From the NCBI RefSeq assembly GCF_030028105.1, contig NC_092383.1, positions 87,377,921 through 87,441,920 on the forward strand: a stretch of DNA of 64,000 nt, in the 5' to 3' direction. The notes beneath the pieces are model-generated. The model was given only the letters and a program-made list of their open reading frames with translations. It was not told the DNA's origin and searched no databases. The translations under genes were made by a program, and so were the position numbers. This DNA comes from Mobula birostris (lineage: Eukaryota). Below, piece by piece: positions 15,075 through 61,081 of the stretch. Each line of letters begins with the position of its first letter. The stretch's first letter is position 1.

Positions 15075-16110
15075 GTCAGAAAGTGGGGAGGGCAATATGT
15101 GCCTAGTGGTGGGATTCCGTTGGAGATGTCAGAAGTTCTGAAGAATTATGTGCTGGACATGGAGACTCAAGGCTTACCACCCACCAGCTTCCATGTCCAG
15201 CACAGAGGTCTCTGTAACTTCCACCACCTCCAGTGGAATCTCACCACCATGCACATCTTTCCCCCTCCCCCACTTTCTGCTTTCCACAGCAACTGCTTCC
15301 TACGTAACTCCCTTATCCATCCATCCCTCTCCACTGATCTCCCTCCTGGCACTTATCCTTGCAACAAGAACAAACGCCTCACCTGCCCCTGCAGTTCCTC
15401 CTTCACCACCATTCAGGGCCCCAAACAGCCCTTCCAGGTAAGGCAACACTTTACCTGTGAATCTGTTGGGGCCATCAACTGAATCCGGTGCTCCAGGTGC
15501 AGCCTCCTGTATATTGGTGTGACCTGACATAGGTTGGGAGACTGCCTCGCCGAGCACCTATACTCCGTCTGGCAGAAAAAGTGGGATCTCCCAGTGGCCG
15601 CCTGTTTTACTTCTACTTCTCATTCCCATTCTGACACGTCAATCCATGGCGTCCTCCACTGTCGTAATTAGGCTACACTTAGATTAGAGGAACAACACTT
15701 TATAATCCATCTGTGTGGCCTCCAACCTGACGGCATGAACATCGATTTCTCCAGCTTCCAGTATTGCCCTGCCCCTTTCACCATTCCCAATTCCCCTTTC
15801 CCTTCTCAACTTATCTCCTTACCTGCCCATCATCTCCCTCTGGTGCTCTTCCCCCTTTTTTTCTTCCATGGCCTTCTATCGTCTCCTATTAGATTCTCCC
15901 TTCTCCAGCCCTTTATAGGTTTCACCAAACAACTTCCCAGCTCTTCATTTCACACATCCCCCCTCCCCCAGTTTCACCTACCATCTTGTGTTTCTTCCTC
16001 CCCTCACCCCAACTTTTATCTCTGATTCCTCATCTTTTTTCTTCAGTCCTGATGAAGGGTCTTGGCCCAAAACGTTGACTATACTCTGTTCCATATATGC
16101 TGCCTGGTCA
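15075..16110 (+). mobile_element. Penelope-like element 3' part (GIY-YIG endonuclease and 3' UTR), with an inverted copy of its 5' segment
   Basis: PGTYPC..RQHFTCESVGA..IRCSRC.LLYIG..HRLGD..EH..EEQH.I..L.GLQPDGMNIDFS. 15075-15160 is an inverted homolog of about 15194-15290. Confidence 0.88.
16044..16081 (+). ncRNA. Minimal type I hammerhead ribozyme motif, best-preserved copy (G12 mutated)
   Basis: CAGTC-CTGATGA-AGGG TCTTGG CCC-AAAA-CGTT-GACTA. The CUGAUGA core, stem II (GGG/CCC) and stem I are present. GAAA has become AAAA and GUC has become GUU. Confidence 0.7.
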
Positions 16111-16143: not shown

Positions 16144-16183
16144 ATGCTGTGGACTTTGCTTGTTTGGATTGGTTTCCTCCCCT
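16144..16183 (+). CDS. Leader (signal peptide) exon of Ig-superfamily receptor gene A
   Basis: MLWTLLVWIGFLP plus 1 nt (40 nt, phase 1). The 5' flank ggtctctgtgaataaaATG and about 110 nt of the following intron align with the paralogous leader at 61042-61081, with the GT at the same position. The donor context is weak (CCT|GTGATT). Confidence 0.75.
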
Positions 16184-17538
16184 GTGATTTACAGACAGCT
16201 CTGGATATTTGCAAAATCAATGTTGGTTTGAGAGTTGTACACCGTTCCCACAACAATGCTCGAATACCCGTCGACACTAAAGATGTCAGAAACTGGAGTT
16301 CGGAATTCAACGGGTCAAGCTGCACCTGTCAAGGGGAGGAGAAATGTCAATGGTTTGGATCGAGACCCTGCATCAAGTGTGAGTGGAGAATGAGATAAAG
16401 TAAATAGGACAGGAGGAGGTGTGAGACTGGGTCCATTAGGTGGTTCAGGACTGAGGAGAGGTGAAGCACAACATGCAAATGGAATGGGGAAGAAAAGGGG
16501 TGGCCTTTGGAGGCTGGTGAGAGGTTGAAACAGATCAGGAGAAAAGGGGAGTCGTGCAGGTGAGGGAAGAATACATCCAGATGGAGAAATCCCCTTGAGG
16601 CTGTTAAGTGGAAACATCAGGTCTTCCATTGCTGGAATCTGATCTTCCTCTGTAAGAATCACTATGACAATTGACTTTATTGTCTTGAAATCATTGTCTT
16701 TCCTGGGTCAGTGGGGCAATCAGTAAAGAATATTACTGGAACTGGAGTCCAAGGTAAACTAGGGTGGGTAGAGATGAAAAGATTTCTCTCCTTCAAGGAC
16801 TTTCTAATCCAGATGGAATTCTGCAATCTGGCAATTCGTCATTATCATTATCAATATGTGGTTTTTAATTCCAGATATAATTAATAAATTTGATCGAAAC
16901 ATACAATATATTTTTACAGAATTTGAAATTAAACTGGATTTCTGCATACTAAAGTAACAACCTTTGTTGCAGCACCTTCTAACTGCACATACAAGTATTT
17001 GACAGGTACAAAATATAATATTTCCTTTGGAATCAGAAGGCACAGTTTCGGGCACTATGAAGGGTTTCTTTCTGCAGTTTATAAATTTGTCTGTAAGTGG
17101 GGAGGAAGTCAGGACATTCACCTCAAGAGATCCCATCAACCACATCTGAATCCTGGAGTTCCCTGGAATCTGAGATGCAGATGCATCCCAAATGAAACAG
17201 CTGGGATCTTTGTCGACATTTCAAAGGCTGAAATATCCTGAAGTAAATGGAAAGCTCAACACTGCGCTGTCCCTCAATACTGCACTGGAAGGTCAGCTCT
17301 GGGTTTCTGCTCAGGACTCTGGAGTGGAAAGTGAACCCACAATGTACTGACACAGGGGAGAGAGCACTGACACAGCTGACACAGTAACAGCACTGACCGC
17401 ACTTCATGCCAAAATCATTGGCTGTGGCGTCATGGACCACATGTGTTGGACATGACCTGGACATGTTTTTACCATCATGTTCAAAAATATTTGTTTGCAT
17501 TGAATTGTTCCTGTCAAATCTGAAAATATCTCCCTCAG

Positions 17539-17859
17539 TTTCAGGTGCATTGTGGGCAGAGAAATATGTAAGAGGAGTCGTCGGAAGAGCGATCACAGTC
17601 GATTGTCACTATGAAGAAAAGTACCGCTCACACACAAAGTATTGGTGCCATGGATGGACTCGTCACTGTTCAGCTTTAGTGGAAACAAATGGGCAACACA
17701 GACAGAGTGGACGAGTGTCAATCACAGATAACCCAGAACAGAGAATATTTACTGTTACTATGGAGGATCTTCGCTCTGGAGATACAGGGTGGTACAGCTG
17801 TGGAATTACAACAGCAGGTGTCGATACGAGATCTAGTGTACATCTACAAGTATCTGATG
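17539..17859 (+). CDS. V-type Ig exon V1 (CD300/pIgR/MDIR-like)
   Basis: ctccctcag|..|gtagg, 321 nt, phase 1-1. SGALWAEKYVRGVVGRAITVDCHY..KYWCHGWTRHC..GRVSITDN..FTVTMEDLRSGDTGWYSCG carries the V-set Cys/Trp/DxGxYxC motifs plus the C-C' extra Cys pair. Confidence 0.95.
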
Positions 17860-18235
17860 GTAGGTTTCTCAGGGATTGACTTTGTGCCTTCCATAAAGTA
17901 AGTGTCTCTTGATCTTTGTCCAAGCATTGTCAATCCCTCACTATCTCTGCATTCACATCAGTGCCAAATGTTCACTTCTTTATGGTAGGTCATTGAACCC
18001 AGTCACAAATTAATTATCTCCTGAAAGCCACCAAACAGATATCTCACATTACTGTGGAATTATAAGACTAGTTTTCAATGGGAGATTTAATTTACATCTA
18101 CAAGTAAAGTAAATGTCTCCTGATCTTTGTCCCCATCCTGTCCATCCCTCACATAAACCCAGTCACAATATCATTTTCTCCTGAAAGACACCAAACATGT
18201 GACAGATATCTCACATCACTGTCTTTAAACAAGAA

Positions 18236-18810
18236 GGGGCCACTTTATTTGGTACCTCCTATACCTAATAAAGTGGCCAATGATTGGATGTTCTTGGTCT
18301 TCTGCTTCTGTGTCCCATCCACTTCAAGGTTCAATATGTTGTATTTTCAGATGCTCTTCAGCACACCACTGTCATAACACACGGTTATTTGAATTCCTGT
18401 CAGTTTCTGTCAGCTTGAACCAGTCCGGCATTTCTCCTCTGACCTCTCTCATTAACAAGGTATTTTTTGTTCACAAAATTGCTGCTCACTGGATGTTTTA
18501 TTTATGTTGTTCACACCATTCTCTGTAACCTCTAGAGACCGTTGTGGGTGAAAATCCCAGAAGATCAGTAGTTTCTGAGATTATCTAACTACACCATCTG
18601 GCCCCAACAAGTATTTCATGGTCAAAGTCACTTTAGATCACCTTTCTTCCTCATTCTGATGTCTGGCCTAAACAGAGACAGAATTTCTTGACTCTGTCTG
18701 CATGCTTAAATGGACTGTATTGCTGCCACATGATTGACCAATTAGATATTTGGATTAATGAGCGGGTGAACAGGTGTGTCTAATAAAGTGGCAGAAGAGT
18801 GTTTGATTTT
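18236..18810. mobile_element. Tc1/mariner-derived non-autonomous element
   Basis: Repeated cctaataaagtggc terminal motifs near 18266 and 18779. A similar element lies at about 59560-60000. Confidence 0.5.
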
Positions 18811-18853
18811 CAGATGTTCATTCAGTGTCTGATTGTTTAATTCTTTCCCACAG

Positions 18854-19174
18854 ATCCTGTGTCTGTTCCTGTGCTTCGATATCTGTCACCAGCAAATGTC
18901 TCACGTCTCGGGGGCTCAATGTCAGTTTCCTGTGAGTCTCTCCAGGGATCCCTTCCCATTCAGTACACATGGTATGAACAAACCTCATCTGGGCATCCAA
19001 AGATCTCAGATACCAATGAACTAGCTCTACATTGTCAATCCTTCAACCAGCAGCACCATCAATATTACTGCAGTGCCTTGAATTGGCTTGGAGCAAGATC
19101 CAGTGCAATGGTTAATGTGACAGTCTTCAACAACGGAGAGATCTGTAGTTATGTGACAGAAATCAATGGCACCA
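18854..19174 (+). CDS. C2-type Ig exon C2a (FcR-like/MDIR)
   Basis: tttcccacag|..|gtaagt, 321 nt, phase 1-1. PVSVPVLRYLSP..SVSCESLQGSLPIQYTWY..LHCQSF..QYYCSALN.LG..S..VNVTV..EICSY. Confidence 0.95.
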
Positions 19175-20489
19175 GTAAGTCCTCCTTTCAAGGGAGGATA
19201 CATTTAAATATTTCTTTTTGTTACTCTGTGACTGCTGCTCTTACACTTCTAGTGAGAGTACGGTATTTCTTTGCATTTGTAGAAGCTACACTTTGCAGAC
19301 ACCTTGGGGTAGAAATAAGGTGTAGTGAACAGTCAGATCCATCACTTCCTCAATGAAGATGTGGAGCATCTCAAACATAGTTGGAATTGCACTTCCAGAC
19401 AAATTGAGAGAATTCCATTCATACTTCCAGCTTGTGCTTTGAAAAGGCCAGAATAGGCATTGAGTTGTGAGACAGTGACACTCATAAAATGAAAAGGAAG
19501 GACAGGTCTGCAAGTAGATAAATCACCTGGACCAGATAGACTGCACCCCAGCATTCTGAAAGAGATAGCTGAAGAGGTTATGAAGGCAATAGTGGTGAAC
19601 TTTCAAGAAGAACAAGACTCTGGAATGTTCCAGAGCACTGGAAATTTGAAAGTGTCACTCCACTCTTTAAGAAGGAAAGGAGGCAAAAGGAAGGGAATTA
19701 CAGAACAGTTATTATGACATCAGTGGTTGGGAAGATGTTGGAGTCCATTACTAAGAACAAGCTTTTTCTTTGCAAACATCCACAAAAACAGAGGAGTGGC
19801 CCAAAGAATGAATGACAGTTAAACGTTAGAACCCCTAAGCCTCCCCCAGCTCCCCCCTCCCATTCACAAGCAGCAGCAAGGCAATGACACCCCTCCTTCC
19901 CACATGAGCAAAAAAAGCACCAACACCCTCCACCGAGCACTCAAACATGCAGCAAAGCATCAATAAAGACACAGACTTGCAGAACCCCAAAGACAACTCC
20001 TCCCAGTAATTCGATATACTGCAGGGTCTCTGTCTCCCAACTAAGAGAAAAGGGGGTCTCCCCGTATCTCAGTGAGAGGGAACATATAACAAACAACTCG
20101 TTGATTTATAATGTTAAATGGCTGTTGCGTCACTTTTCCAAGCTCGGTGCCCAGAGGGTCGGCCCCAGGGCTCAGGTCTCAGGACACACAGCCAGCAGCT
20201 AACCCACTGCTCCCGATGTTCCATGTTCTCCAGAGACGCCTCAGTCAGGGGCACCGGCCGAGAATCAGCATGTCCCCAGAGACACAAAAATCCGGCACCC
20301 TGAATGCAGGCTAGTCTTCCAGGCCACGTCCTTGGGATATCAAAAAGCGGCCGGTCGTAAGGACTTGATAGTGGGTCCCATTTCCGCAAATATCCTAAGT
20401 CAGAGTCAGAGTCTTCCAAAGAACCTTGATAAGGAAAAAAAACGTATATAAAAAAACAGGAATAGAGCCATTTCCAAAGATGCAAGAAA

Positions 20490-20760
20490 AGTGGTAACGT
20501 TACAGCACTATAGGACCATGGTCAGACCCCACTTGGAGTACTATTCTCATTTCTGGTCACCTCACTACAGGAAGGATGTGGAAACTATAGAAAGGGTGCA
20601 GAGGAGATTTACAAGGATGTTGCCTGGATTGGGGAGCATGCCTTATGAGAATAGGTTGAATAAACTCGACCTTTTCTCCTTAGAGCGGCAGAGGATGAGA
20701 GATGACCTGATAGAGGTGTATCAGATGATGAGATACATTGATCGTGTGGATAGTCTTATG
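20490..20760 (+). mobile_element. CR1 LINE RT C-terminal fragment
   Basis: LQHYRTMVRPHLEY..FWSPHYRKDVETIERVQRRFTRMLPGL. Confidence 0.9.
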
Positions 20761-20920
20761 GTCCCATTGTCTTATGGTCATCACTATCTTTAGAAGTTCA
20801 TGAACAGTTCAAGTAAATCATTGACTACTTGAACTGAGTTTCAGGTTGCTGATTAAAATACCTCGCTCACTTTGAGATACAGGAAGGGAACCCAGACCTT
20901 CTATTTGTGTCTATTGTCAG

Positions 20921-20959
20921 ATATGAACAAGGCTGCTGCATTTCATGGCTGTGAACAGG
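20921..20959 (+). CDS. Candidate 39-nt stalk mini-exon (NMNKAAAFHGCEQ)
   Basis: ctattgtcag|..G|gtaata, phase 1-1. Its HxCE segment ttcatggctgtgaa matches ttcatttctgtgaa in the stalk exon at 30985. Confidence 0.45.
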
Positions 20960-22007
20960 GTAATAAGCTTTAAAAATCCATGTAAAACATTATAGGAATG
21001 TCAATCCTATGCGAAGGATGGGCAAGTCATCAGTTTGCTGCTCCACGAGGTTTACCTGTCTCTGTGCTGAACTGAGCCGGTGGCCTGTAACTAACGGCTC
21101 CTTAACTGGCTGCATTGATGACTGGCTTTATGGATGTGGACACACATTTGTGAATTTCAGTTCCAAATTTATTTACTTTCTTTTATTCTTTGCATGATTT
21201 ATTTTTTTACTACACATTGTGTGTTTAACAATGTTTTTGAAAGGATTCTATAGTTTTTTTTTGTTTTGCGGCTCCTTGTAAAGAGAAAATTTGAAGCCTG
21301 TATATTGTATTCATACTTTGACATTAAATATACTTTGAAATTTGAAATTGAACTGCAATATGATTGGCTGTAATCCAATAAACTGTCACACCAATGCAAT
21401 GAAATAGAATTCTGATTTTAACCTTTCAAAAGTATGTTACAGTTTAGAGAGGATGCAGCAGAGTCATAGAGATATAGGCTATGGAAACAGGTGCTTCAGC
21501 CCAAATTGTCCACGCTGACCACAGTGTCTTCCTGAGCTTCTCCCATTTCCTCACATTTGGCTGGTATCCTTCTAGAGCTTTCCTGTCCATGAATGTACAA
21601 ATCTATTTGAAATATTGTTTGTGTACCCACCTCTAGCTCTTCCTCTGGCAGCCTTTTCCACATACACACTGCACTGCTCTGTGTGGAAAACACTGCCCCT
21701 CCAAGTCTCTGCCCTCTCACCTTAACCCGATGCTCTCTAGTTTGTCATTTCCCCTACCATGTGATAAAGACCGTGATTATCCACCATACCTTTGCACCTC
21801 TTAATTTGTAAACCTTTATAAGGTCATCCCCAGCTCTGTTCACTTCAGGGAAAACTGCTCCAACCTATCGATAACCCAGACGCCCCAGTTCCAGCAGCAT
21901 CTTTGTGAATGCTTTCTGTACCTTCTCTAATTTAATCACACTCTTCCTCTGGAACTGCACAGCATAGGCAAGGTGATTATCTTGTCAACGTCCTTTATAG
22001 TTGTAAC

Positions 22008-23934
22008 CATAGTTCTCTCTAAGCTGTGCCCATGTCCACGCACACACACATTTTTCAACCAGCTCACAAAGGAAATTAATGTGCGCACAAAAAGTTAGCT
22101 TCCTAAAATAATGTAGTAGTTAATAAGTATACTTATTGAAAATAATCTTTTAGCTAACTGTTTCTGTTAACTAGTTAGTCAGTTTTTCAAATACCACAAT
22201 GCACATCACTAATTTACGTCACCTCACCTATCCTGTTCCGGTTTCTACAGCTGCATCACGGCGGCAGCCATGTTTGGCGGACAGTGTCCCTATCGGAAAG
22301 TTTACAAAGATCTGTTTCAAATCCTGTAGATAGCTTACTAAATTTTTGTTGGAAAAAATATTGATTCACTATGTCGAATTCAAAAGAAGTGAAGGGCATG
22401 AAGCGCAAAAGAACTGCAAAGTTGTTTAAAGTTGAATGGCTTAACAAAATAGTAGAAACTGTTACACCAAAAGCTCATGAGGTCATGCACGTTCAGCTAC
22501 AAGAAATATTTATGTGTGATTCGGAAACTGGAGTAATCTGTTTGTATTGTCGTGATGCAAAAGTTGCTGGAGAATTTGCTAGTGGAAATAATGGGATGAT
22601 ATTTGGAAACTTAACTTTTTGAAGTGTCATTTGGCAAGTAAATCACATTTGGACGGTGTATAAAAGCTCAGGCAACAGAACCCGTCATTACCCGTTACAG
22701 GAGTGCTACGCATGTTACGGTTGAGTGCAGATGAGCAAGAGCGAAAACGATCAAACTCAGAGGAGATCAAATTTCAGGTACAAGAATGATCGGCTTTTGA
22801 TTTCTCCGCAATTGCAGATTGTGACTTCACTTTTGACGATGAACAAGTTAATACCTTATGTTTAAAATATCATGATTTTCTAGCTGAAAATATTGTAATC
22901 TTTAGACAGTTTAATAATTTCAAATTTTCCACGCGAGAAACAATTTAATCCAAACCGATTTCAAACTTTTCTCAAATGGTGGCATTTGTACCTCAAAATG
23001 AACAGTTTTGCAACCTTGCACAGTTGATGGACATTGGGGGAACCTTTCTTGCGTGTAGTGCGGACTGTGAGCGAGGTTCTAGCCTAATGAATCAACTCAA
23101 AGACAAGCTGAGAGACTGTTTAGGTAAATGTCATTTGGATATGTTAATGAGAATCAAAAGCTATCAATGTGATGGAAGTTCTATTAGTCGAGATAGAGCT
23201 TACAAAGAATGGGTAAATGCCAAAGATCGGAGAGAGAAAAAATAACTGAGTGACTTAAATATGATAAAAAGTAAATATCTCCAACGTGACGGCATGAACA
23301 TTGACTTCTCTAACTTCTGTTAATGCCCCTCCTCCCCTTCATACCCCATCCCTTATTTATTTATTTATTATTATCATTATTATGATTTTTTTCTTTCCCC
23401 TTTTTTCCTTTCTTTTTTCTCCCTCTGTGCCTCTCGCTGTAACTTCTTGCCCATCCTCTGGGCTTCCCCCCCCCCACTTTTCTTTCTCCCTAGGCCTCCC
23501 GTCCTATGATTATTTCCCTTCTCCAACCTCGTATCCCTTTTGCCAATCAACTTTCCAGCTCTTAGCTTCATCCTCTCCCCCTTCGGTCTTCTCCTATCAT
23601 TTCGGATCTCCCCTTCCCCGCCCATTTTCAAATTTCTTACTGTCTGTTCTTTTAGTTAGTCCTGACGAAGGGTCTTGGCCCAAAAAGTCGACTGTACCTC
23701 TTCCTATAGATGCTGCCTGGCCTGCTGTGTTCACCAGCATTTTTTGTGTGTGTGACTTCAGTATGTATGTTATTTTGTTGTTATTCTGAGCAGTTTCATG
23801 TCAAGTATTTTGTAAACCTACATAAACTGTCCCATGTGTGCATTCAGTGCGCACATACTTCTGTCACAGGAAACAAAATTGCACAACATAAGATTTTTAC
23901 GCACACTGGCTACTACAAATTAGAGGGAACATTG
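22008..23934 (+). mobile_element. Internally deleted hAT DNA transposon
   Basis: TIRs CATAGTTCTCTCTAA / TTAGAGGGAACATTG. 8-bp TSD GTTGTAAC (22000-22007) vs GCTGTAAC (23935-23942). N-terminal zinc-finger-like FKVEWL..CLYC and hATC-like SADCERGSSLMNQLKDKLR..LDMLMRI. Confidence 0.85.
23277..23750 (+). mobile_element. Penelope 3' fragment with hammerhead-like motif (23657-23694), nested in the hAT
   Basis: LQRDGMNIDFSNF end of the endonuclease, pyrimidine-rich UTR, then TAGTC-CTGACGA-AGGG TCTTGG CCC-AAAAA-GTC-GACTG. Confidence 0.8.
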
Positions 23935-25427
23935 GCTGTAACATGCCATTCCAATGGTACTTAATGCACCATCCAAAGAAGGTAAGCCAGTCATACTCCT
24001 TGTTCAACACTTTGTCCACCTGTGTTGCCACTTTCAGGAACCAATGTAGTTGCACACCTCATTCCCTGCAGTGTAAGTTGTGTCCTTGTTTAATTTCCCA
24101 AAATGCCTGAGTTCAATTCCATCACCTGTTCCATTGGCCACTTTCCTAGTTCAAATTTTAAAGTAATTTTGTTACCAAACTCTGTACACTATAAACAATC
24201 GAGAGACACATCTTTTTGCAGATACCCACAAAACAAAGTAACACAATAGAATCCACGACAAACCGCACACTACATAGACTGACAAACATCTAATGTGCAA
24301 AAGAGGATGAATGGTGCAAATAATAAAAATATGTAAACAATTAACACGTGGAACATGAGACACAGAGTCCCTGAAAGTGAGTCCGCAGCTGCAGAGTCAG
24401 TTCAGCACTGAGATGAGTGAAGCCAATTCAGGAGCCCGATAGCTGCAGATCACCAGGTGCTGACAAACCTGGTGGTGTGGGCCCCAAGACTCCAGCACCT
24501 CCCACCTGATGGTAGTAGCAAGAAGAGAGGGAGACGGGTCAAATGCAGGCAGATGGAACAGGCTCAACTGGGGGTTGTTGCTGGCACAGAGTAATGGGGC
24601 TGAACACTGGATCATTTTCCAGGTCCCTTTGTAAACTTAAACAACTCTTTCCACTGTCCACTGCACTACAGTGTCATCCACACATTACTAATCATGTTAC
24701 CTACATTATCATTACAAACTATTCATATCAATGACAAATAACAGTGGTTAAGAAAAAACAGCACTGATCCCAATGGTACACCACTGGTGATAAAGTCCGA
24801 TGTTGTCAGAAAACCCACTCCTCACTATCACAATCTGACTGCTTCCATCATCAAACAAATGAGTCATATTTTTAGAGAGAAGATTTCCCACGCACAAAAT
24901 CATGTTGACTATCCCAAATCAGATCTCGCCTTTTCAAATTCAGGTAGATCCTGTCTCACACTATCACCTCCAGTAAGTTACCCACCACTGATCTTGTGCT
25001 CACCTGCCTGGAATGGGACTGAATCGGTAATCTATTGACTCAGAAATGTGGAAACACACTGAGACATTAGTGGTCAGTGGCAATGATGACTCCAATTAAA
25101 TAAAAATCATTACATGTGAAGAGCTGGGAGCACCAGATGAGGGACGTTGCTGTTGTCTTCTCAGTCAATGTGGAATTCAATTACACCAATTGATAGTGTG
25201 GCAGATTCCTTAGAACACAGCGACAGTTTTAAATAAAACAACTTTATTTAATTTTAGTCTATTCTTTATATTGTGTTTTTTTTTGTTCTCCATCAGATCC
25301 AGAGAAACAATGATTTTGTTTTCCTTTACACTTGTTACAGGAAATGACATTAAACAATCTTGAAACTTGAATCTGCTTGTGTAAATTTGATTTTACCCGT
25401 CCATTTTCTGAAGAACTTCTCCCTCAG

Positions 25428-25748
25428 TTTCAGGTGCTTTATGGGCAGAAGATAAAGTGAGAGGAGTTGTGGGAAGAGCGATCACAATCGATTGTCACTA
25501 TGCACTAATGTACCGTTCACACACAAAGTATTTGTGCCACATGTGGGATCGCCAATGCTCATTGTTAGTGAATACAAATGGGCAAAGTGAACAGTATGGA
25601 AGAACGACAATCAGAGATAGCACATCCCTGGGAATATTTACTGTTACTATGAAGAATCTTGTCTCTCAAGATACAGGACTTTACAGATGCGGAATTGTAA
25701 CATCTGGCAATCATCCAGCCTTTGACATTTATGTAGAAATTTCTGACG
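25428..25748 (+). CDS. V-type Ig exon V2 (CD300/pIgR/MDIR-like)
   Basis: ctccctcag|..|gtagg, 321 nt, phase 1-1. SGALWAEDKVRGVVGRAITIDCHY..KYLCHMWDRQC..FTVTMKNLVSQDTGLYRCG is a paralog of V1. Confidence 0.95.
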
Positions 25749-26799
25749 GTAGGTTTCTCGTATATAGACGATGTCTCCACTGAAATGTCTGATTCCTGTT
25801 TTCCCTGGTCAGAGTTAGGGCAGCGCGGATATCCTGAGGCTCGACAGTGCTGCAGAGTCCTGTGGGTTGTTGGCAAGGAACGGGGAAACCTCTCTCATGA
25901 TGCTCTCATTGAGTGCGGAGTCTGACCCACTGATGGGACACTGATTTCCAGTGGGAGGCTCAACACGTTTTCCTGCCTCTGAACTGTATGAAATGTCACC
26001 TTGTCAGAGGTTTGAGTTCAGACCAAAATTAATAACCTGATATTAACAGGTTGATGAGAAACAAGTGTTTCTCATGGTTAAATACCTTGAAATCCATAAA
26101 AAGGGAATCAGTTCCAGAGCTAAACAGACTTCATTCAGTTCTCCCACAGCAGGCTTTCCCACTACCCATCCCTGCTTCATGGACCAGTCACTCCCCCCTC
26201 TACCACATGCTGACTCTCTTTGTCTCTGTCAATGTGCTCCAGGAATCCACCGCCCAGCACCCACTGACCATCTACTTCCCAGCAGCCAGCCTCTACACCC
26301 AGCTCATTCCTTGTGAGAAATAGAGCAATGGATTTAGAGAAAACATGGGACACAGTCCAGCACAAGAATAGACTCTTTGGTTTACTTACCATGATTCCAT
26401 CGTATTGCATTGGGCTATATCCCTTCCATCCCTCCCTTTTCATATCCTTGTACAAAAACCTCTTAAATATTGTGATAATATCCTTTTCCTCCTGCCGATC
26501 TGATTGTCTGACTGTATGTTCCATGCAATCACCACCCTCAGTGTAAAAGAAAAGTTGTGTCACAAATGTCCTTTAAAATTTCCCCTGTTCACCTTAAAAC
26601 TATGCTTACAGTTATTTGATATTTCAACCCTGGGAAATAAAGATTCTGACTATTTTCCCTATCTCTGACTTCTATAAATTTATAAACTTCTACCAGGTCC
26701 TCCCTCAGCCTCCTACACTCGAGTGAAAACAAACCAAGTTTTTCCAAATATGTCCATGGCTAATACACTCCAATCCAGATAAATATGTATTGATTGATT

Positions 26800-27070
26800 G
26801 ATTGAGATATAGCGTGGAATATGCCCTTCAAGCATTGCCACCCAGCAGTCCCCAGATTTAGCCCCAGCCTAATCATGAGAAAATTTACAGTGAAAAAATT
26901 AACCTACCAACCGGTAGGTCTTTGGACTGTGGGATGAAACCGGAGCACTTGGAGGAGTCCCATGTGGTCACAGGGAGAAAGAACACATTTGGAACAGTCA
27001 GTGGCAGGAATTGAACTCAGTCGCTGGTACTGTAAAGCATTGTGGTAACCGTTATGCTGTGTGACGCCCC
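26800..27070 (-). mobile_element. tRNA-derived SINE (HE1-like); related copies at about 30430-30720(+), 32750-33020(-) and 33600-33840(-)
   Basis: The minus strand starts with a tRNA-like head (..ggttaccacaatgctttacagtaccagcgactgagttcaattcc). A shared body gtttcctccgggtgctccggtttc-like recurs in the other copies. Confidence 0.65.
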
Positions 27071-27379
27071 GGTGACATTCTAGTGAACCTCTTCACCCTC
27101 TCCAAAATACTCACATCTTTTCTGCAGTGTTACACCAGAAATACATATTATGTTCCAAATGTGGCCGAACCAAAATTTTATGAAGCTACAAAATGCCTTA
27201 TCAGCCTCAGTCTCCAACATGTAGAATGAAGAAGGCAAATGTACAGAATGTTTTCATTACCATTATGTCCACTTACGTTGGTACTTGCAGGGAGCAATGG
27301 ACTTGTACACCAAGAATCTCTGTACATCAACTCTAAAGAAATCCAGATATTAAATTCTAGATGAAGTCAATCCTCCCTA

Positions 27380-27790
27380 TTGTATGTGGAGTATTTGAAG
27401 GCCCTGGGCCTGAATTTGATGGAGTTTAGAAGAATGAGGGAGGATCTCATGGAAAGCTATCAAGTATTGCAAAGCCCAGTGGATGTGGAGAGGATGTTTC
27501 CAACATCTAGAGTGCACAGACTCAGAATAAAAGTATCTTCTTTAAAGGAGAGATGAGGTGGAAGTTCTTCAGCCTGAAGTTGGTGAATCTGTGGACTTCA
27601 TTGCAGCTTTGGAGGCCAAATCATTGGGTACATTTAAAGCAGAGGTTGATTAATAAGGGTATCAAAGGTTACAGAGAGAAGGCCGGAGAATAGATGAAGA
27701 GGGATAATAAATCAGCCATGATTGAATGGTGGAGCAGACTCGATGGACTGAATGGCCTATTTCTGCTCCTATATCTTATGGTCTTATGGC
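27380..27790 (+). mobile_element. CR1 LINE 3' end
   Basis: Decayed RT C-terminus followed by the (ttatggtc)n-type tail at about 27775-27790. Confidence 0.7.
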
Positions 27791-28278
27791 CTACGGTCCT
27801 TCTAGTTCTCTAGTCACATATGATTTCTTATTGGCTTCATATCAATATCAATACTCATGGGTTCCTTTGCTGCTGTCGGTCACTGAAACCAATAACAATT
27901 ATACTCTGTCCCAAAAGTCACCATTCATTTTGTACATATCTGACAATTTCCTGCTTTCACATGATGGGGAGTTTTCCAGGACACACATAAACGTTGCCAT
28001 TCCAACGTCAAACTGTTGGGTGCCACTTTAGACTGTCTCCTTGATGCTGAGAGAGATTGTAACTCTGATTTTCTCACTGACACATACTCAGTGTCATCCC
28101 TGCTGTCCTGATTTGGAGTCCTGCAGACATGGCAGTTCAGGCAGATGCGAGGACGCAGAGACACAGAGAGGTAAATAAGCTGCTGAGATTTCAAACTGGT
28201 TGCTCCTGGTCGAGATACAGACCTGCTGAAGTCTTTAATGCGCTTGATTTTCAGATATTCACTGATTCTTTTCCACAG

Positions 28279-28596
28279 ACCCCGTGTCTGTTCCTTTGCT
28301 TCGTTTTTCACCACCAAGTGGCTCAAGTTGTGCGGACTCTGTGTCAGTGTCCTGTGAGTCTGTCCATGGATCCCTTCCCATTCAGTACTCGTGGTATGAA
28401 AAGACGCCATCTGTGGATTCAAAGATCGCTGACACAAATAAACTGGATCTACATTGCCAATCCATAAAATACAAAAATCATCTGTATTATTGCAAAGCCT
28501 CAAATACTAAAGGAGAAAAGTCCAGTGAAGTGGTCAATGTGTCCATCTCCAACAGTGTCAGCACCTGCAGAAATGTGATTGAAGTCAACAGCATGG
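28279..28596 (+). CDS. C2-type Ig exon C2b
   Basis: ttttccacag|..|gtaagt, 318 nt, phase 1-1. PVSVPLLRFSPP..SVSCESVHGSLPIQYSWY..LHCQS..LYYCKASN.KG..SEVVNVSI..STCRN. Confidence 0.95.
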
Positions 28597-29869
28597 GTAA
28601 GTGACTTTGATCCTTTATGATAGTCAATGGGGTACATTTGAATGATTGATATGTGCTGGATATTGTGTGTTGGAACTTCACTCAGGATCATGGAGTGTAT
28701 GTTGTCACCACCTTTCAGAGAATGAAAAGCTTTTCGGCACAGCAGTTCAAACGTCAGTCTCTCAGCACAGGGTCTCCTGTCTCTGATCTGACTCTTGCTG
28801 GCTGGGTGTGAATGTGTCTCATCTGGTAATATTTCTGGCCATTCATTAAGATAGTCCCTCTGAGATAAACTACTTCAAAGTTTAAAGTAAGTTAATTATC
28901 AAAGTATATACATTTGTCACCACATACTACCCTGAGATCCACTTTCTTGCAGGCATTCAGAATAGATACAAATAAATAAAACAGAACCAATGAAAACCAC
29001 ACACCATCAAAGATGTATAAACAACCATTGTCAAAAAGAAGAAAAACTGTGCAAATATAAAAGAAACAAATTATTAATAAGTAAAAAAATGATATTGAGA
29101 GCATAAGTTAAAGATATCTTGAAAGTGAGTCCATTGGTTGTGGAATTGATTTGTGTTGAAGTGAGAGGAGTTATCCAGGCTGACTTAGGAGGCTGATGGT
29201 TGAAGGTTAATAACTGATTCTGAACCTGGTGGGGTGAGACCTTCTTCTCAATGGCAACAGTGACAAGAATTTCAGAGAGAAGATTTGAGGAAAGGAACAA
29301 ACATGAGACTACAAGGATACAGGGTCATTATCAGTTGGGAGCCAAAGTTCAAAGTAGATTTAGTATTGAAGTATGTATACCATGTACAACTTTGAGATTT
29401 GTCTCATGACAGGCAGCCACAGAACAAAGAAACTCAAAAGAACCAATTAAAAAAAAGACAATCAGACACCCAATGTTCAAAAAAACATAATCAATTAAAC
29501 AATTATAGTAAGCAAATAACATTCAGGACTGAAGTTCTGGTAAATGAGTCCACAGCAATGAAAACAGTCACAGCTAGTCTCGGAGCCCTTTAAATACAGG
29601 CTACAGCCTCGGTTCAGCACATAGACGAGTAATCCTTGAGGAGCAGTTAGCCTCACATCAGTCCATCCCTATTCCCCTGCCCTGACACACTGACCTTTTC
29701 AATCTGGCCTGGTGTTTATATCAGGATCGTTCCATCCTCTCTGAATCGAGGCCCTGCCTCTTCAATATACTCTCATGCCCATGACCTAAATCATCAATTA
29801 GGACTGTACCTGACCTTTCCAATCTAACCGGGCACTAAAATTGGTCGGGCATCAGTGTGTTCCTTGGTC

Positions 29870-30420
29870 TTCAGGCCACCAGCGTTGTACGCAGTTTTGG
29901 TCTAATGAAAGATGTTCTTGTTCTGGACAGAGGTGAGCAAAAGATCAGCAGACACAAGGAAACCTGCAGGTGCTGGAAATTCAAGCAACACACATAAAAG
30001 TTGCTGGTGGATGCAGCAGGCCAGGCAACATCTCCAGGAAACGGTACAGTCGACGTTTGAGATGCTACCTGGCCTGCTATATTCACCAGCAACTTTTATA
30101 TGTGTTGCTTAAAAGATCAGCAGACTGATTTCTGGAATGCCACAAGTGGTTGATAAGGTTTTTATTTGCTGGAGTTCAGCAGGCTGAGAGGTGTGCATTG
30201 CCCCTTTTCCCTCCAAACATGCCAATATGAATTCCTGCCAGGAAGTTCAACTTTTTTCTCACTTGTCCACAGAACATTCTCCCAAAATCGTTGTAGAACA
30301 TCCAGGTGGTCTTTTGCAAACTTGAGATGTTTTTTGTTGGAGAACAGTGGTTTCCTCCATGGTGGCCTTCCATGAACACCATTCTAGTTCAGTATTTTTC
30401 TTACAGTGGACACGTGCAAT
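29870..30420 (-). mobile_element. Tc1-type transposase relic interrupted by a 157-bp insertion
   Basis: The minus-strand translation matches the Tc1 FW.NVLW.DE.K.ELFG..WRK.G region and C-terminal segment. A 15-bp duplicated target flanks the insert at 29954-30110. Confidence 0.65.
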
Positions 30421-30984
30421 AAGCATAACATTATTAGAGTGCCAGCGATCAGTGATGGGGGTCCAATTCCCACCAATGTTTACATTCTCCCAGTGACTCT
30501 GTGGGTTTCCTCTGGGTGCTCCGGTTTCCTCTCGCATTCCAAAGATGCACAGGTTGGTATTAGTAATTCGCAGGTAAGCTATTTTGGCTCTGGAAGCATG
30601 GAACACTTGCCAGCTGCCCCCAGCACATAATCTATGTTGGTCGTTTTTATAAACGATGCATTTCACTGTGTGCTCTGATGTATATGTGACAAGTAAATCT
30701 CATCTTTAATCTTTAAATGTGCATTGAGTAAGAGATCACTTTTGGTTCACCATGCTCAAGTACTATTGGTCCAACAATTCTGTCTCTTATTCTTTCAAGT
30801 ACAACCAGTTGAAATTTCCGAAATACTGATGAAGGGCCTCGGCCAGAAACTTTAACTATTTACTCTTTTCCATTAATAGTGCATGGCCTGCTGAGTTCCT
30901 CCAGCATGTTGTATGTGTTGATTGGATTTCCAGCATCTGCAGATTTTCTCTTGTTTGAAATTGAATTTTATTTTCTTTTAACAG

Positions 30985-31063
30985 GGCCAATTCATTTCTG
31001 TGAAAATGCCGTGACACAATTCATGACAACTGCACAAAGGGAAGAATCTTCATCATATAAAAT
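30985..31063 (+). CDS. Stalk exon (GPIHFCENAVTQFMTTAQREESSSYK)
   Basis: ttttcttttaacag|..AT|gtaaag, 79 nt, phase 1 to 2. It links C2b in frame to the TM exon. Confidence 0.75.
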
Positions 31064-32004
31064 GTAAAGTATAAGGTTCCCTGTACAGATGTTTCACTAC
31101 TACTGCTTCCAAACAGAGCCAGTTGGGAGAGAAATCTGTTTTTGACATGATTAACTTCAATGAATTTATGAATTAGAAACTGAGTACTCCTCATTTTCCT
31201 GTACAGGCATCAAGCCTGAGATCAAAGATAATCTTCTTTCCCAAAACATTTAATAATTGAAGCATAGCAGTTCATTTCTAGTCATCTCATTATGGGAAGG
31301 ATGTAAAAGCTTCAGAATAGACTTACCAGGATGCTACCTGGTATAGACGTGTGCCAATAGGTTGAGTGAGCTAGGGCTTTTCATTTTGGACAGAAGGGTG
31401 ATGAGAGGTATTCAGATAATAAATTTTCTTTGAACTTTAAGATGAGAAGACGTAATTTTAGTTATGGGGGAAAATATAGGTGGGATGTCAGATGTAGGTT
31501 TCTGACACAGAGAGTGGCAAGTATTTGGAATGTGCTTCTAGGTACAGGTAGAGACAAGTTTGTTTGGGAAATTTAAGATAGGCACATGAGGAAAGGAATA
31601 TAAAAGGCTATGTGGGAGGAAAGGGTTAGATTAATATCGGAATAGTTTAAAGAGCCAGCACAACATGGTGGGCCGAAGAGTCTGTATGTTGCTGTGCTGT
31701 TCTATGTTCTATCTGCTTTTCCCTTACATATTTGGTTTTTTTATTTGTTTCCTTCTCTATTATCATCATAAAGTGAATTTTATCTTGCTTACATCAACTT
31801 ACTTTTCCTACATATTTTGGTTAATTTACCCTCTAAATCGAGTATTCCCAACCTGGGGTCCATAAACCCCTTCCTTAATGGTATTAGTCCATAGCATAAA
31901 AAAGGTTGGAACCCTTGCTCTAAATGTTCAAATTTGCAAATTCCCTTCATTATCTCTTTAGCCATTGTGTTACAAGTGAGTCCCTTCTACATTGTTGATC
32001 TTAA

Positions 32005-32690
32005 CTCCTCTATTAGATTATGATGACATGCAGTCCTCTTTTATTGTTATTTAGTAATGCATGCATTAGGAAATGATACAATTTGTTCCTCCAGAATGAT
32101 ATCACAGAAGCACAAGAAAAACCAAGGCTAAAAAAAACCTGACAAAAACCACGTAATTATAACATATAGTTACAACAGTGCAAGCAATACTGTAATTTGA
32201 TAGAAGAACAGACCATGGGCACAGTAAAAAAAGTCTCAAAGTCTCTCGAAAGACCCATCATCTCACGCAGATGGTAGAAGGAAGAAAACTCTTACTGCCA
32301 TGAGCTTCCAGCACCGCAAACCTGCCGATGCAGCACCCTGGAAGCACCTGACGACAGTCCAACTCCGAGACTGTCCGAAAACTTCGAGCCTCCGACCAGC
32401 TCTCCGACACAGAGCACCATCTCTGCCGAGCGCATTGAGCCCGGCCCTGGCAACAGGCAATAGGCAAAGCCAAGGATTTGGGGCCTTCCCCTCCGGAGAT
32501 TCTCGATCGCACAGTAGCAACGGCAGCGAAGCAGGCATTTCAGAAGTTTCTCCACATGTTCCTCCGTGCTTCTCACGGCAATCTCCCTCAAATCAAGATT
32601 GTGCACGGCATCCTACTTCACAAATACGATATCAATTTGGTGCGGCCGCGTGCGCTGCGTCACGTCGCCATCTTCTGCTCCCCCTACCAC
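32005..32690 (-). mobile_element. Short non-autonomous retroelement
   Basis: The minus strand begins AAGATGGCG and ends with AATAAAAGAGGACTGC..cataatctaat. Homologous to 12010-12345. Confidence 0.6.
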
Positions 32691-34177
32691 TGTACTTATT
32701 CACTGTATTTCCACACCTACCACTGTGTTTTCTTATTTATTCTCTTTACTGAGATATAGTGTGGAATAGGCCTTTCCAGCCCTTTGAGCCGCACCACCCA
32801 GCAACCCTCAATTTTAACCTCAGCCTAATCACAGGACATACTACACAACCAATTAATTAACTGACCAATATGTCCTTGGATTCTGGTAGGAAACTGGAGC
32901 ACCAAGGGAAAATGAACACATTCCATGAGGAGGACAGACAGACTCTTTACAGATCACATTGGTGTTGAACTCTGAATCCCAAAGCCGTAATAGCATCATG
33001 CCATGGTGCCCAAGGGATACTGAGATTTTTGAAATCATCCCCGGTTACTTTTCTGAAGGTTTTTTTAAATTGTCCTTATTTATCTGTGTATTCTATCCCC
33101 CAACTCCCTTCTTAAGACACGTATGGATCATTTATCAGTTTTCATACAGTATCTGTCAGCAAGGTTTCATAGCCGATCTTCTAAAGGTGATGTCCTCTGT
33201 GTCTTCTTTCGGCAAGATTGTCTATATTTGTCACATGTACATTGAGACATACATTGAAAAGCTGTCAGGCCTGCTCATAAAGGAACCTCCCAATCTTCAT
33301 CTGACTAATAGAATTCACCTGCCCCTCATTCTGGACTCATTACCTGCAGCCTATTTAACCCAGTTCTCATCCACAGTCCTTGTTCACTCATCAAACCAAC
33401 TGGCCTTCACTCTCCATGCATAAAGTTTACCTTGTTGCCTGCTGTGTTCATTTTCTGGTCTTTCTTGTTTTGTGTCCACTCATCACTTGTTATTTTATTA
33501 TCTATTAGTAAAGTATCATTTACTGCTAAATTGTCTCTGCTGCTCGATTTTGGTCAGGCCTCATCTATTTTTCCTGACAAATGCATCATTTTACATCAAA
33601 CTAAGTCAGCAAAGATTTTGTTGGGCAGCCCACAAGTGTTGCCACACTTCCGATACCAACATCACACACCAACAGCAAACTTACCCTCACTCATATGTCT
33701 TTGGAATAATGGAGGAAACTGGTGCCCCTGGATGAAGCCCATGCAGTCACTGGGGGAAAGTACAAACTCCTTACAGACAGTAGCAAGAATTAAACCCAAT
33801 GTTACAGCTGACAGTTATAAATCATTATGCTAACCACAACGGACCATTTCAACGACATTACATTATCCCCAGTCTCATCGTTACCCAACCTCATTATTTC
33901 CTTCCCTGCCATTCCTAAATCTTTCTGCATTATCCACTGTCACAACATACAGTATCTGCAGTCGTGTTTCGGCAATTATGTCGCCAAATGAAGATCATAG
34001 GTTATCTTCCCTCCCTCAGTCCAGCATCAGATTAATCTCCCAGCTGAACTTCCCTGGCCTTGCTGCTTTCATTGCTCCACTTCACTAATTTCACAGAGGA
34101 TCCAGGAGGTAAATATTTCAAATGCAAAGGTGTCTTCTCTTCTACTACTGACTCTATATCTCTTCCCCTTTGTTCAG

Positions 34178-34268
34178 TTACATGATCTGGAACATGGGGC
34201 GCTGGCTGTTCTTTGCTCTGCTGGGGATCTGCACTATCGCTGTCACATCGTTCACAAGAGACAAGAAG
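34178..34268 (+). CDS. Transmembrane exon (IYMIWNMGRWLFFALLGICTIAVTSFTRDKK)
   Basis: cccctttgttcag|..AAG|gtaagt, 91 nt, phase 2 to 0. Hydrophobic stretch with an Arg (34200-34202) in an N-x-x-R context, followed by basic stop-transfer residues. Confidence 0.85.
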
Positions 34269-35074
34269 GTAAGTCTAGGTCAGTAGATGCTCCCGAATGG
34301 TTTCCATGAATTAGAACATAGAACATTGAACACTACAGCACAGGAAATGTACGTTGGCCCACTATGTTGTGCTGACCTCTTAACCTACTCTAGGATCAAT
34401 CTAACCCGTCTGTCCTATATAGTCTTCAATTTTTCTGTGATCCATGCATTCTTTGGAAGAGTTTCTTAGATGCTGCTAATGTATCCGCCTCTACCACAAA
34501 CCCTGGTAGGATCCTTCACGTACCTACATCTCTCTGTGTAAAAAACTTACCTCTGGCATTCCCTCGATGCATTTCTCCAATCACCTTAAATTATTCCCCC
34601 TCATATTAGACATTACTGCCCTTGGAAAGTGTATCTGGCTACGCAATCAATATATGCCTCTTATTCTTACACTTCAAGGTATAATACTTGCCATCCTCCT
34701 TTGCGCCAAATTACTTCAAATATGTTGGATATTTAAAGGTAAAAAAGCATTCACAAATGAACTTTAAACTTTTTGTCAAACCAGTATTCCATGAAGATGA
34801 TATACTTTAAGCAGGTTTTCATGCTCTGTCCATGTGTAGAATGAAGTCCAGTGCTCTACAAGAAAATGTATTGGACACCGTGTTTCGGACAGAATTCTGT
34901 TGCCAGTTGCCCACATGAAATGTAAATCAAAGTCAACGTCCACTTTATTGTCCAATGCACAAGCACGTGTATGCATCAGTACAATGAATGCAACATCACA
35001 GGTGCATAGAATCATGCAGTATTGCATGGTTCCCTGTGTCAATCAATCTGATAATTTCACTTTTGCTTTTATAG

Positions 35075-35170
35075 AGATCTGATCAATCAGATCCTCACCG
35101 CCTGGTCCAAGAGAAAAAGAGAAGGATCCCAGATTTCACCGACCGTGGGGGAGTTTTGCACCAAGAATAA
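35075..35170 (+). CDS. Terminal cytoplasmic exon (RSDQSDPHRLVQEKKRRIPDFTDRGGVLHQE*)
   Basis: ttttgcttttatag| acceptor, phase 0, stop TAA at 35168-35170. No tyrosine. Confidence 0.65.
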   Translation, partial: RSDQSDPHRLVQEKKRRIPDFTDRGGVLHQE

Positions 35171-60975: not shown

Positions 60976-61041
60976 TATTTTTATTTGACAGTTAATTCTC
61001 TCTGTGAACGGACAAGTGCTGACTGGGTCCATGTGAATTAA

Positions 61042-61081
61042 ATGATGTGGATTTCGATTCTTCTAATTAGTATCCTAGATG
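61042..61081 (+). pseudogene. Leader exon of paralog D (MMWISILLISILD)
   Basis: 40 nt, phase 1, strong donor G|gtaagt. Homologous to 16144-16183 including flanks. Confidence 0.8.

What the first reader, a model, noticed from the sequence alone, without database searches (positions are those of the whole stretch)
16144..35170. Four-domain V-C2-V-C2 activating immune receptor apparently made by fusing two tandem V-C2 genes
Seen: all exons have AG/GT boundaries and compatible phases (L 1; V1, C2a, V2, C2b 1-1; stalk 1-2; TM 2-0; tail 0), giving an open 528 aa product (541 aa with the mini-exon). V2 still begins with SGALWA, the half of the signal peptide encoded at the start of every N-terminal V exon. 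I found no leader or intron-1 homolog in front of V2 and no TM or tail exon after C2a. Established: skate modular domain immune-type receptors (MDIRs) combine CD300/pIgR/TREM-like V domains with C2 domains. Inference: an internal duplication of the V-C2 cassette created a longer single receptor within a rapidly turning-over chondrichthyan receptor cluster.
Basis: partly seen in the sequence, partly recalled or inferred. Interest (0 to 1): 0.85.

Follow-up and report, generated by a model that had tools for sequence, protein, structure and literature searches.

The report
Manta ray four-domain MDIR activating receptor
This is a correctly read, intact gene for a four-domain cell-surface immune receptor of a ray, but its V-C2-V-C2 build is an old one shared by rays, skates, sharks and a chimaera (skate MDIR5 has it), not a new fusion made at this spot.

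Summary
The exons are real. Eight + strand exons with AG/GT borders and compatible phases give an open 528-aa protein: leader, V1, C2a, V2, C2b, stalk, TM, tail.

The single-gene reading is supported.
- A Mobula birostris RefSeq model (332 aa) links a C2a exon to this locus's C2b (99%) and to its stalk, TM and tail, which match the window residue for residue.
- Searches with 249 family proteins find no leader, TM or tail exon in the 6.25-kb C2a-V2 intron.

Caveat: most exonic RNA contigs differ from the window by 3-9%, so they may come from alleles or close paralogs.

The "fusion of two tandem genes here" reading is not supported.
- The protein is collinear end to end with skate MDIR5 (56% identity). 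V-C2-V-C2 models are annotated in stingrays, sawfish, skates, sharks and chimaera.
- V2, C2a and C2b each sit in well-supported clades of same-position domains from Mobula, Hemitrygon and Hypanus.
- AU tests reject V1+V2 (p=0.0016) and C2a+C2b (p=7e-5) as sister pairs.
- SGALWA begins 63 internal V domains across the family.
- The mini-exon has no support.

Verdict: a new member of a known kind, an MDIR-type activating receptor. Earlier scan notes concern other receptor families, not this one.

The parts
16144..16183 (+). Leader exon: ATG plus 13 codons (MLWTLLVWIGFLP) plus 1 nt, donor GTGATT, ends in phase 1
   Evidence: A leader-plus-intron homolog lies at 61026-61156. Family leaders are 69-77% identical.
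17539..17859 (+). V1 exon (321 nt, phase 1-1). A pIgR/CD300-type V-set domain with the extra C-x7-C pair; it starts with F-SGALWA, which completes the signal peptide.
   Evidence: Pfam V-set E 8e-14. PDB best hits are pIgR at 2e-51 and CD300/CLM-1 at 1e-20. RNA contig depth is 36-190, against 0 in the next 200 nt of intron.
18854..19174 (+). C2a exon (321 nt, phase 1-1), an FcRL-type C2 domain
   Evidence: It sits in a 99* clade of position-2 domains of Mobula, Hemitrygon and Hypanus. RNA contigs cover 18873-19170.
19175..25427 (+). 6.25-kb intron between C2a and V2. It holds a LINE RT fragment (about 20491-20793) and an interspersed repeat (23280-23750). No family exon is found in it.
   Evidence: Low-depth contigs with no differences from the window lie within it (records 1, 2, 6, 12, 22, 30).
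20921..20959 (+).
   Evidence: Contigs 20766-21056, 20792-21051 and 20801-21112 cross both of its borders unspliced. Homologs have ...EINGT-I-SGALWA... with no insert.
25428..25748 (+). V2 exon (321 nt, phase 1-1), an internal V-set domain that starts with I-SGALWA
   Evidence: Pfam V-set E 3e-9. A 105-nt X2 contig consists of 28 nt of the C2a end, then TA, then 25428-25502 with 0 differences. V2 sits in a 98* clade of position-3 domains.
28279..28596 (+). C2b exon (318 nt, phase 1-1), an FcRL-type C2 domain
   Evidence: PDB FcRL5 E 7.8e-32. 99% identical to P0004 residues 140-244. Sits in a 95* clade of position-4 domains.
30985..31063 (+). Stalk exon (79 nt, phase 1-2): GPIHFCENAVTQFMTTAQREESSSYK
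   Evidence: It is one of the candidates that give an open 528-aa protein. Exact match in P0004 and homologous stalk in P0005.
34178..34268 (+). Transmembrane exon (91 nt, phase 2-0): YMIWNMGRWLFFALLGICTIAVTSFTRDKK, with an arginine in the membrane span
   Evidence: 100% identical in P0004. The W-x-x-x-R-W core is conserved in rays, skates (MDIR5) and sharks.
35075..35170 (+). Cytoplasmic tail exon: 31 aa, no tyrosine, stop TAA at 35168-35170
   Evidence: 100% identical in P0004 and 75% in P0034.

Best explanation
The region is one gene of the chondrichthyan MDIR family (modular domain immune-type receptors). RefSeq names its relatives 'polymeric immunoglobulin receptor-like' or 'Fc receptor-like 5'. 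It encodes a 528-aa type I membrane protein. The signal peptide is split between exon 1 and the start of the V1 exon. Four Ig ectodomains follow, alternating a pIgR/CD300-type V with an FcRL-type C2 (V1-C2a-V2-C2b). Then come a short stalk, a transmembrane helix with a buried arginine, and a 31-aa tail without tyrosine.

Shown here: exon structure, open frame, domain types, collinearity with skate MDIR5, and the C2a-to-V2 splice in RNA contigs.

Inferred: the arginine recruits an ITAM-bearing adaptor (FcR-gamma or DAP12 type), so ligand binding by the ectodomain activates the cell. Inhibitory relatives with near-identical ectodomains and ITIM tails (such as the 597-aa Hemitrygon protein) act as counterparts. 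The ligand is unknown.

The V-C2-V-C2 build was inherited. The cassette duplication happened before mobulid and dasyatid rays split, and probably much earlier.
For: - Exons, phases and the 528-aa ORF.
- Domain types.
- Splice junction: contigs in X2 (depth 108) and X4 (depth 152) run from 19172, plus 2 nt, straight into the 32 nt that occur only at 25428 in the window. The X2 contig matches V2 at 75 of 75 nt.
- The M. birostris RefSeq protein P0004 joins C2a (94%) to C2b (99%), then to a stalk, TM and tail that match the window residue for residue, so the two halves are annotated as one transcription unit.
- No leader, TM or ITIM exon lies in 19175-25427.
- End-to-end alignment to MDIR5 P0202 (56% over 510 aa), to M. 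birostris P0172 (77% over 513 aa) and to P0154 (89% over 441 aa).
- 27 V-C2-V-C2 models from 16 chondrichthyan species entered the trees (architectures).
- Position-specific clades at 98*, 99* and 95* and the AU rejections.
- The transmembrane arginine is conserved and the tail has no tyrosine.
Against: - Most exonic RNA contigs differ from the window by 3-9% (C2a 11 of 298 nt, V2 16 of 179, C2b 23 of 315), while intronic contigs are identical. The junction contig carries T instead of C at 19173. The RNA may therefore come from another allele or a close paralog such as the P0154 gene.
- Contigs are short k-mer assemblies, and none spans more than one junction.
- The only public model with this TM and tail (P0004) skips V2 and reads V1 out of frame.
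- Leader-to-V1, V1-to-C2a, V2-to-C2b and C2b-to-stalk junctions were not seen directly for this allele.
- Adaptor pairing and ligand are untested.
Confidence: 0.8

Rival explanations
1. One reading: the four-domain gene arose at this locus, recently, by fusing two neighbouring V-C2 genes. Gene A lost its TM and tail, gene B lost its leader. Alternatively it arose by a lineage-specific internal duplication.
For: V2 keeps the SGALWA signal-peptide half and the same acceptor sequence as V1. No leader lies before V2 and no TM lies after C2a. The intron between the halves is large and full of transposons.
Against: The same collinear build is found in skate MDIR5 and in many ray, shark and chimaera models. 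V2, C2a and C2b group with same-position domains of Hemitrygon and Hypanus rather than with V1, or with each other. AU tests give p=0.0016 and p=7e-5 against sister pairs. SGALWA begins 63 internal V domains family-wide. V1/V2 are only 60% identical and C2a/C2b only 55%.
Confidence: 0.05
2. Two units, not one functional gene. Either L-V1-C2a is a decaying or secreted two-domain remnant and V2-C2b-TM is a leaderless pseudogene, or the joined transcripts seen are read-through splicing from a paralog and not from this locus.
For: Exonic RNA contigs are 3-9% unlike the window, and no run holds the exact V2 exon (share of words 0.07-0.27). The P0004 model is aberrant: it uses a cryptic donor in V1 and skips V2. 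Orphan family exons exist elsewhere in the window.
Against: All eight exons are intact with good splice sites and matching phases. One junction contig matches V2 at 75 of 75 nt. P0004 ties C2a to this TM and tail. The arrangement is the family's standard one. Intronic contigs identical to the window suggest that the locus is transcribed, although DNA carry-over in the RNA libraries was not excluded.
Confidence: 0.1
3. One gene, but the four-domain form is only one product. Because every ectodomain exon is phase 1-1, exon skipping yields 2-, 3- and 4-domain receptors, and a shorter form may predominate.
For: RefSeq model P0004 joins C2a directly to C2b. A 322-nt X2 contig enters a V2-like exon from 248 nt of other sequence, and its last base before the junction fits the end of a V exon (record 5). 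Family models show many domain orders, including V-V-C2, V-C2-C2 and C2-V-V.
Against: Gene-finder models can be wrong, and several are clearly fused or transposon-contaminated. The C2a-to-V2 junction has high contig depth (108 and 152). No quantification was possible.
Confidence: 0.3

Closest known systems
Skate MDIR5 (Modular domain immune-type receptor 5, Rostroraja/Raja eglanteria; UniRef entry, P0202, 501 aa; family described by Cannon et al. 2006, Immunogenetics 58:362, cited in PMC3031540)
   Same: It is collinear over the whole length: leader, V, C2, V, C2, stalk, TM with the W-K-V-G-R-W arginine, and a short acidic tail. Identity is 56% over 510 aa. The internal V also begins with SGALWA.
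   Different: It comes from a different order (skate versus mobulid ray). The window gene has N where MDIR5 has K before the arginine, and a longer, different tail (31 aa). Its a-type and b-type domains belong to ray-specific clades. I could not read the 2006 paper, so what it says about MDIR5 signalling is from my memory only.
Mobula birostris RefSeq 'Fc receptor-like protein 5' (P0004, 332 aa) and 'polymeric immunoglobulin receptor-like' isoform X1 (P0172, 505 aa)
   Same: P0004 shares C2b (99%), and its stalk, TM and tail match the window residue for residue. It is the ortholog, an allele or a near-copy. P0172 is a full V1-C2a-V2-C2b-TM(R) paralog, 77% identical over 513 aa.
   Different: P0004 lacks V2 and reads V1 out of frame. 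Its gene spans 14.0 kb, against 17.5 kb for the same stretch in the window. The full four-domain product of this locus is not among the public models found.
Hemitrygon akajei 'polymeric immunoglobulin receptor-like' (P0005, 597 aa)
   Same: It has the same V1-C2a-V2-C2b-stalk ectodomain, 76% identical over 467 aa.
   Different: It has an uncharged TM and a long tail with three ITIM-like Y-A-D/N motifs. It is the inhibitory counterpart type.
Mammalian pIgR, CD300/CMRF35 and FcRL5
   Same: The V domains hit pIgR (2e-51 over several domains), CD300/CLM-1 (1e-20), NKp44 and TREM2. The C2 domains hit FcRL5 (7.8e-32).
   Different: No mammalian receptor alternates these two domain types. pIgR has only V-type domains and a long transcytosis tail. 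CD300 has one V. FcRL5 has only C2-type domains.

Membership tests
MDIR (modular domain immune-type receptors of cartilaginous fish) | Significant full-length sequence similarity to the named skate MDIR proteins | tested here: met
   56% identity over 510 aa to MDIR5 P0202. MDIR2, MDIR3 and MDIR5 were recovered in the family search.
MDIR (modular domain immune-type receptors of cartilaginous fish) | Ectodomain built from CD300/pIgR/TREM-like V domains combined with C2/I-type domains in variable number | tested here: met
   Pfam V-set and Ig_2/Ig_C17orf99. PDB hits to pIgR/CD300 and FcRL5. Architectures listed.
MDIR (modular domain immune-type receptors of cartilaginous fish) | Member of a multigene cluster with activating (charged TM) and inhibitory (ITIM) forms | tested here: inconclusive
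   Further family exons lie in the window at 58290-58607 (-), about 61026-61156 (+) and 63138-63289 (+). Inhibitory relatives were seen in other species. An inhibitory neighbour 23 kb upstream is only an unchecked scan note.
Adaptor-coupled activating Ig-superfamily receptors (FcR-gamma/DAP12 class) | Basic residue inside the transmembrane helix | tested here: met
   The arginine in WNMGRW is conserved in rays, skates and sharks. The preceding N is not conserved (K/N/D/S/Q/T).
Adaptor-coupled activating Ig-superfamily receptors (FcR-gamma/DAP12 class) | Short cytoplasmic tail without ITIM, ITAM or any tyrosine | tested here: met
   The 31-aa tail has no Y.
Adaptor-coupled activating Ig-superfamily receptors (FcR-gamma/DAP12 class) | Physical association with an ITAM adaptor, and signalling through it | not testable with these tools
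   This needs co-expression and co-immunoprecipitation.
Polymeric immunoglobulin receptor (the RefSeq name of most relatives) | Ectodomain of V-type domains only, and a long cytoplasmic tail with transcytosis signals | tested here: not met
   Two of the four domains are FcRL-type C2, and the tail is 31 aa. The name reflects V-domain similarity only.
Fc receptor-like 5 (the RefSeq name of P0004) | Ectodomain of C2-type domains only, and a tail with ITIM or ITAM-like tyrosines | tested here: not met
   V-set domains are present, and the tail has no tyrosine.

The most novel reading that the evidence does not exclude
The phase 1-1 ectodomain exons may be used as optional cassettes. One locus would then produce four-, three- and two-domain receptors on the same arginine-bearing TM: C2a to V2 in RNA contigs, C2a to C2b in the RefSeq model, and a V-like to V2-like junction in another contig. 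Ectodomain length would be a regulated variable within a paired activating/inhibitory family.
Probability: 0.3. Interest if true: 0.45.

Novelty: new member of a known kind. Interest (0 to 1): 0.25.

Why it matters
It gives a complete, checkable gene model for a manta-ray MDIR-type activating receptor. The nearest public model for it is truncated: 332 aa, V2 skipped, V1 out of frame. It also shows that the alternating V-C2-V-C2 build, with distinct 'a' and 'b' cassettes, is older than the split of mobulid and dasyatid rays. That helps anyone tracing how pIgR/CD300-type and FcRL-type domains were combined in early jawed vertebrates. It does not reveal a new kind of receptor or a new gene-fusion event.

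Tried and rejected
- **A leader for V2.** tblastn and blastn with this gene's leader, TM and tail and tblastn with 249 family proteins found nothing in 19175-25427. An ATG/hydrophobic/phase-1-donor scan gave one candidate at 23710 (MLPGLLCSPAFFV). It lies in an interspersed repeat with at least 8 copies in the window and very high RNA depth, and no joint from it to V2 was listed.
- **Shared upstream homology.** The match 15851-16107 vs 23473-23720 looked like a duplicated promoter but is the same repeat.
- **One read-laying run across the whole intron.** The junction spans 6255 nt, which is over the 6000-letter limit, so two adjoining stretches were used instead.
- **DNA of the M. birostris loci of P0004 and P0154.** The file was too large and no DNA was returned. 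I could not test whether V2 is deleted there or decide allele versus paralog.
- **The MDIR paper and a review.** Neither is held.
- **Matching the RNA C2a variant to P0004.** It is a third variant, 100 of 106 identical to each.
- **Earlier scan notes by words.** Nothing relevant was returned.
- **Not done.** I did not predict a structure. The domain assignments were already clear.
Full report
**Observation.**
The + strand between 16144 and 35170 holds eight exons with canonical borders.

| Exon | Coordinates | Notes |
|---|---|---|
| Leader | 16144-16183 | ends in phase 1 |
| V1 | 17539-17859 | phase 1-1 |
| C2a | 18854-19174 | phase 1-1 |
| V2 | 25428-25748 | phase 1-1 |
| C2b | 28279-28596 | phase 1-1 |
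| Stalk | 30985-31063 | phase 1-2 |
| TM | 34178-34268 | phase 2-0 |
| Tail | 35075-35170 | stop TAA |

Each acceptor is an AG behind a pyrimidine tract, and each donor is a GT, mostly GTAAGT or GTAGGT.

Pfam calls V1 and V2 V-set. It calls C2a and C2b weak Ig_2/Ig_C17orf99. Against solved structures, the V domains are closest to pIgR and CD300/CLM-1, then NKp44 and TREM2. The C2 domains are closest to FcRL5.

V1 and V2 are 60% identical, and C2a and C2b are 55%. At the DNA level the similarity is confined to the exons plus about 20 nt of acceptor region.

**Is it one gene?**
Three lines of evidence say yes.

1. RNA contigs show the predicted splice.
   - In runs X2 and X4, contigs of depth 108 and 152 run from the end of C2a (19172), plus two bases, directly into a 32-nt string.
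   - That string occurs in the window only at 25428, the first base of V2.
   - In the second lay, the X2 contig is 105 nt long: 28 nt of C2a, then TA, then 25428-25502 with no mismatch (record 6).
   - A k-mer contig can cross that point only if reads do, so a C2a-to-V2 spliced RNA exists.
2. The representative search returned P0004, RefSeq 'Fc receptor-like protein 5' of Mobula birostris (332 aa).
   - It reads C2a (94%), then C2b (99%), then a stalk, TM and tail that match the window residue for residue.
   - Its junction codon is exactly C2a's last base plus C2b's first two.
   - NCBI's pipeline therefore placed a C2a exon and this TM and tail in one transcription unit, in a V2-skipping form whose N-terminus is V1 read out of frame after a cryptic donor.
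3. Nothing in the 6.25-kb interval looks like a leader, TM or tail.
   - Neither this gene's own exons nor 249 family proteins find any such exon there.
   - The one leader-like ORF, at 23710, lies in an interspersed repeat.

**Caveats on the RNA evidence.**
- The intron contigs shown that lie clear of repeats are identical to the window: 441, 185, 157, 260, 312 and 291 nt with 0 differences.
- Most exonic contigs differ from the window by 3-9%: C2a 11 of 298, V2 16 of 179 and 11 of 122, C2b 23 of 315.
- No run holds the exact V2 exon; the share of words is 0.07-0.27.
- The junction contig has T for C at 19173.
- The expressed sequences may therefore be other alleles or close paralogs. P0154 of M. 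birostris, for example, is 89% identical to the window model over its first 441 aa.
- The junction proves the architecture for this gene or a near copy of it. It does not prove that this exact allele is expressed.
- The contigs are too short to link more than one junction.

**The mini-exon.**
The stretch 20921-20959 has AG/GT borders. Three contigs cross both borders unspliced. Homologs join ...EINGT to I-SGALWA with no insert. I drop it.

**How it arose.**
- The family search shows V-C2-V-C2 proteins in many lineages:
  - Mobula (P0162, P0172);
  - Hemitrygon (P0005, P0184, P0189);
  - Hypanus (P0163, P0174, P0181);
  - Pristis (P0179);
  - skates (P0196, and the published MDIR5, P0202);
  - sharks (P0199, P0203, P0208, P0201, P0215);
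  - Callorhinchus (P0225).
- The window protein aligns end to end with skate MDIR5 (56% over 510 aa) and with P0172 (77% over 513 aa).
- In domain trees, V2 falls in a 98* clade made only of position-3 V domains of Mobula, Hemitrygon and Hypanus.
- C2a falls in a 99* clade of position-2 domains, with one exception.
- C2b falls in a 95* clade that also holds two two-domain proteins. Pristis and skate domains of the same position are neighbours at lower support.
- AU tests reject trees that make the window's V1+V2 (p=0.0016) or C2a+C2b (p=7e-5) exclusive sisters.
- The cassette duplication therefore predates the split of mobulid and dasyatid rays and may be as old as batoids. It was not made at this locus.
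- The SGALWA start of V2 is likewise a family trait. Among the proteins with a species label, 63 internal V domains and 50 N-terminal ones begin with it.
- All V exons seem to carry the signal-peptide c-region. When the exon is internal, that stretch serves as linker.

**Likely function.**
- The TM helix carries an arginine in a W-x-x-x-R-W core that is conserved from sharks to rays and in MDIR5.
- The tail has 31 residues and no tyrosine.
- By established knowledge of paired Ig-superfamily receptors, this predicts association with an ITAM adaptor and an activating role.
- The 597-aa Hemitrygon protein has the same ectodomain type, an uncharged TM and three ITIM-like motifs. It shows the inhibitory counterpart.
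- Adaptor pairing and ligand are inference only.

**Comparison and novelty.**
- This is a member of the MDIR family. RefSeq's names ('pIgR-like', 'FcRL5') each describe only one of the two domain types, and the defining features of pIgR and FcRL5 are not met.
- The four-domain architecture has been public since the MDIR5 sequence was deposited. The 2006 paper is cited in PMC3031540, but I could not read it.
- New here is only a full model for this manta-ray locus, which public annotation has as a truncated form, and a dating of the a/b cassette split.
- Species: the 99-100% match of C2b, TM and tail to an M. birostris protein and other agents' unchecked notes point to a manta ray.
- The window is not the exact RefSeq locus of P0004. 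There is 1 aa difference in C2b, 6 differences plus an indel in C2a, and a gene span of 14.0 kb against 17.5 kb.

**Verdict.**
The fusion-at-this-locus reading is not supported. Interest is low to moderate.

Noticed in passing
window 58290-58607 (-): An intact C2b-like exon on the opposite strand, 72% aa identical to C2b. No V exon of the family lies on that strand in the window. It is probably an inverted gene fragment or part of another family member.
   Followed up: partly
window 61026-61156 (+) and 63138-63289 (+): A leader-plus-intron-1 homolog (66% nt) is followed 2 kb later by a degenerate V-like exon, only 47% aa identical over 34 residues. This is another family gene or pseudogene running off the window's end.
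   Followed up: no
window 23280-23750; copies at 15721-16107, 56453-56753, 29988-30105, 48092-48171, 4498-4972, 30826-30918: An interspersed SINE-like repeat with very high RNA contig depth (about 10^5). One copy ends 37 nt before the leader ATG at 16144, so it may contribute the promoter or 5' UTR.
   Followed up: partly
window 20491-20793 (+); also 46119-46378 and 52283-52531: LINE reverse-transcriptase tail fragments. The copy at 46119 is 91% identical to the one inside the C2a-V2 intron. Several RefSeq family models (for example P0181 residues 470-519) contain translated pieces of this element.
   Followed up: no
proteins P0013, P0009, P0010, P0212: Some public family models are clearly fused or contaminated. 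P0013 ends in a coiled-coil, transposon-like stretch. P0009 is a TRIM69-like protein joined to C2-V-C2-TM. P0010 and P0212 contain two TM segments. Domain counts taken from annotation should be treated with care.
   Followed up: partly
window 25427-25500, X2 contig record 5: A 322-nt RNA contig enters a V2-like exon (5 of 74 nt differences) from 248 nt of other sequence. Its last base before the junction is G, which fits the end of a V exon rather than a C2a exon or a leader. This may be a V-to-V splice of a paralog or a C2a-skipping form.
   Followed up: no
window 9517-9794 and 14529-14681 (+): Two stretches match the N-terminal 150 residues of the Mobula hypostoma model P0152 (about 60% aa), upstream of that model's first V domain. 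They may be upstream exons of a neighbour or repeat-derived sequence.
   Followed up: no
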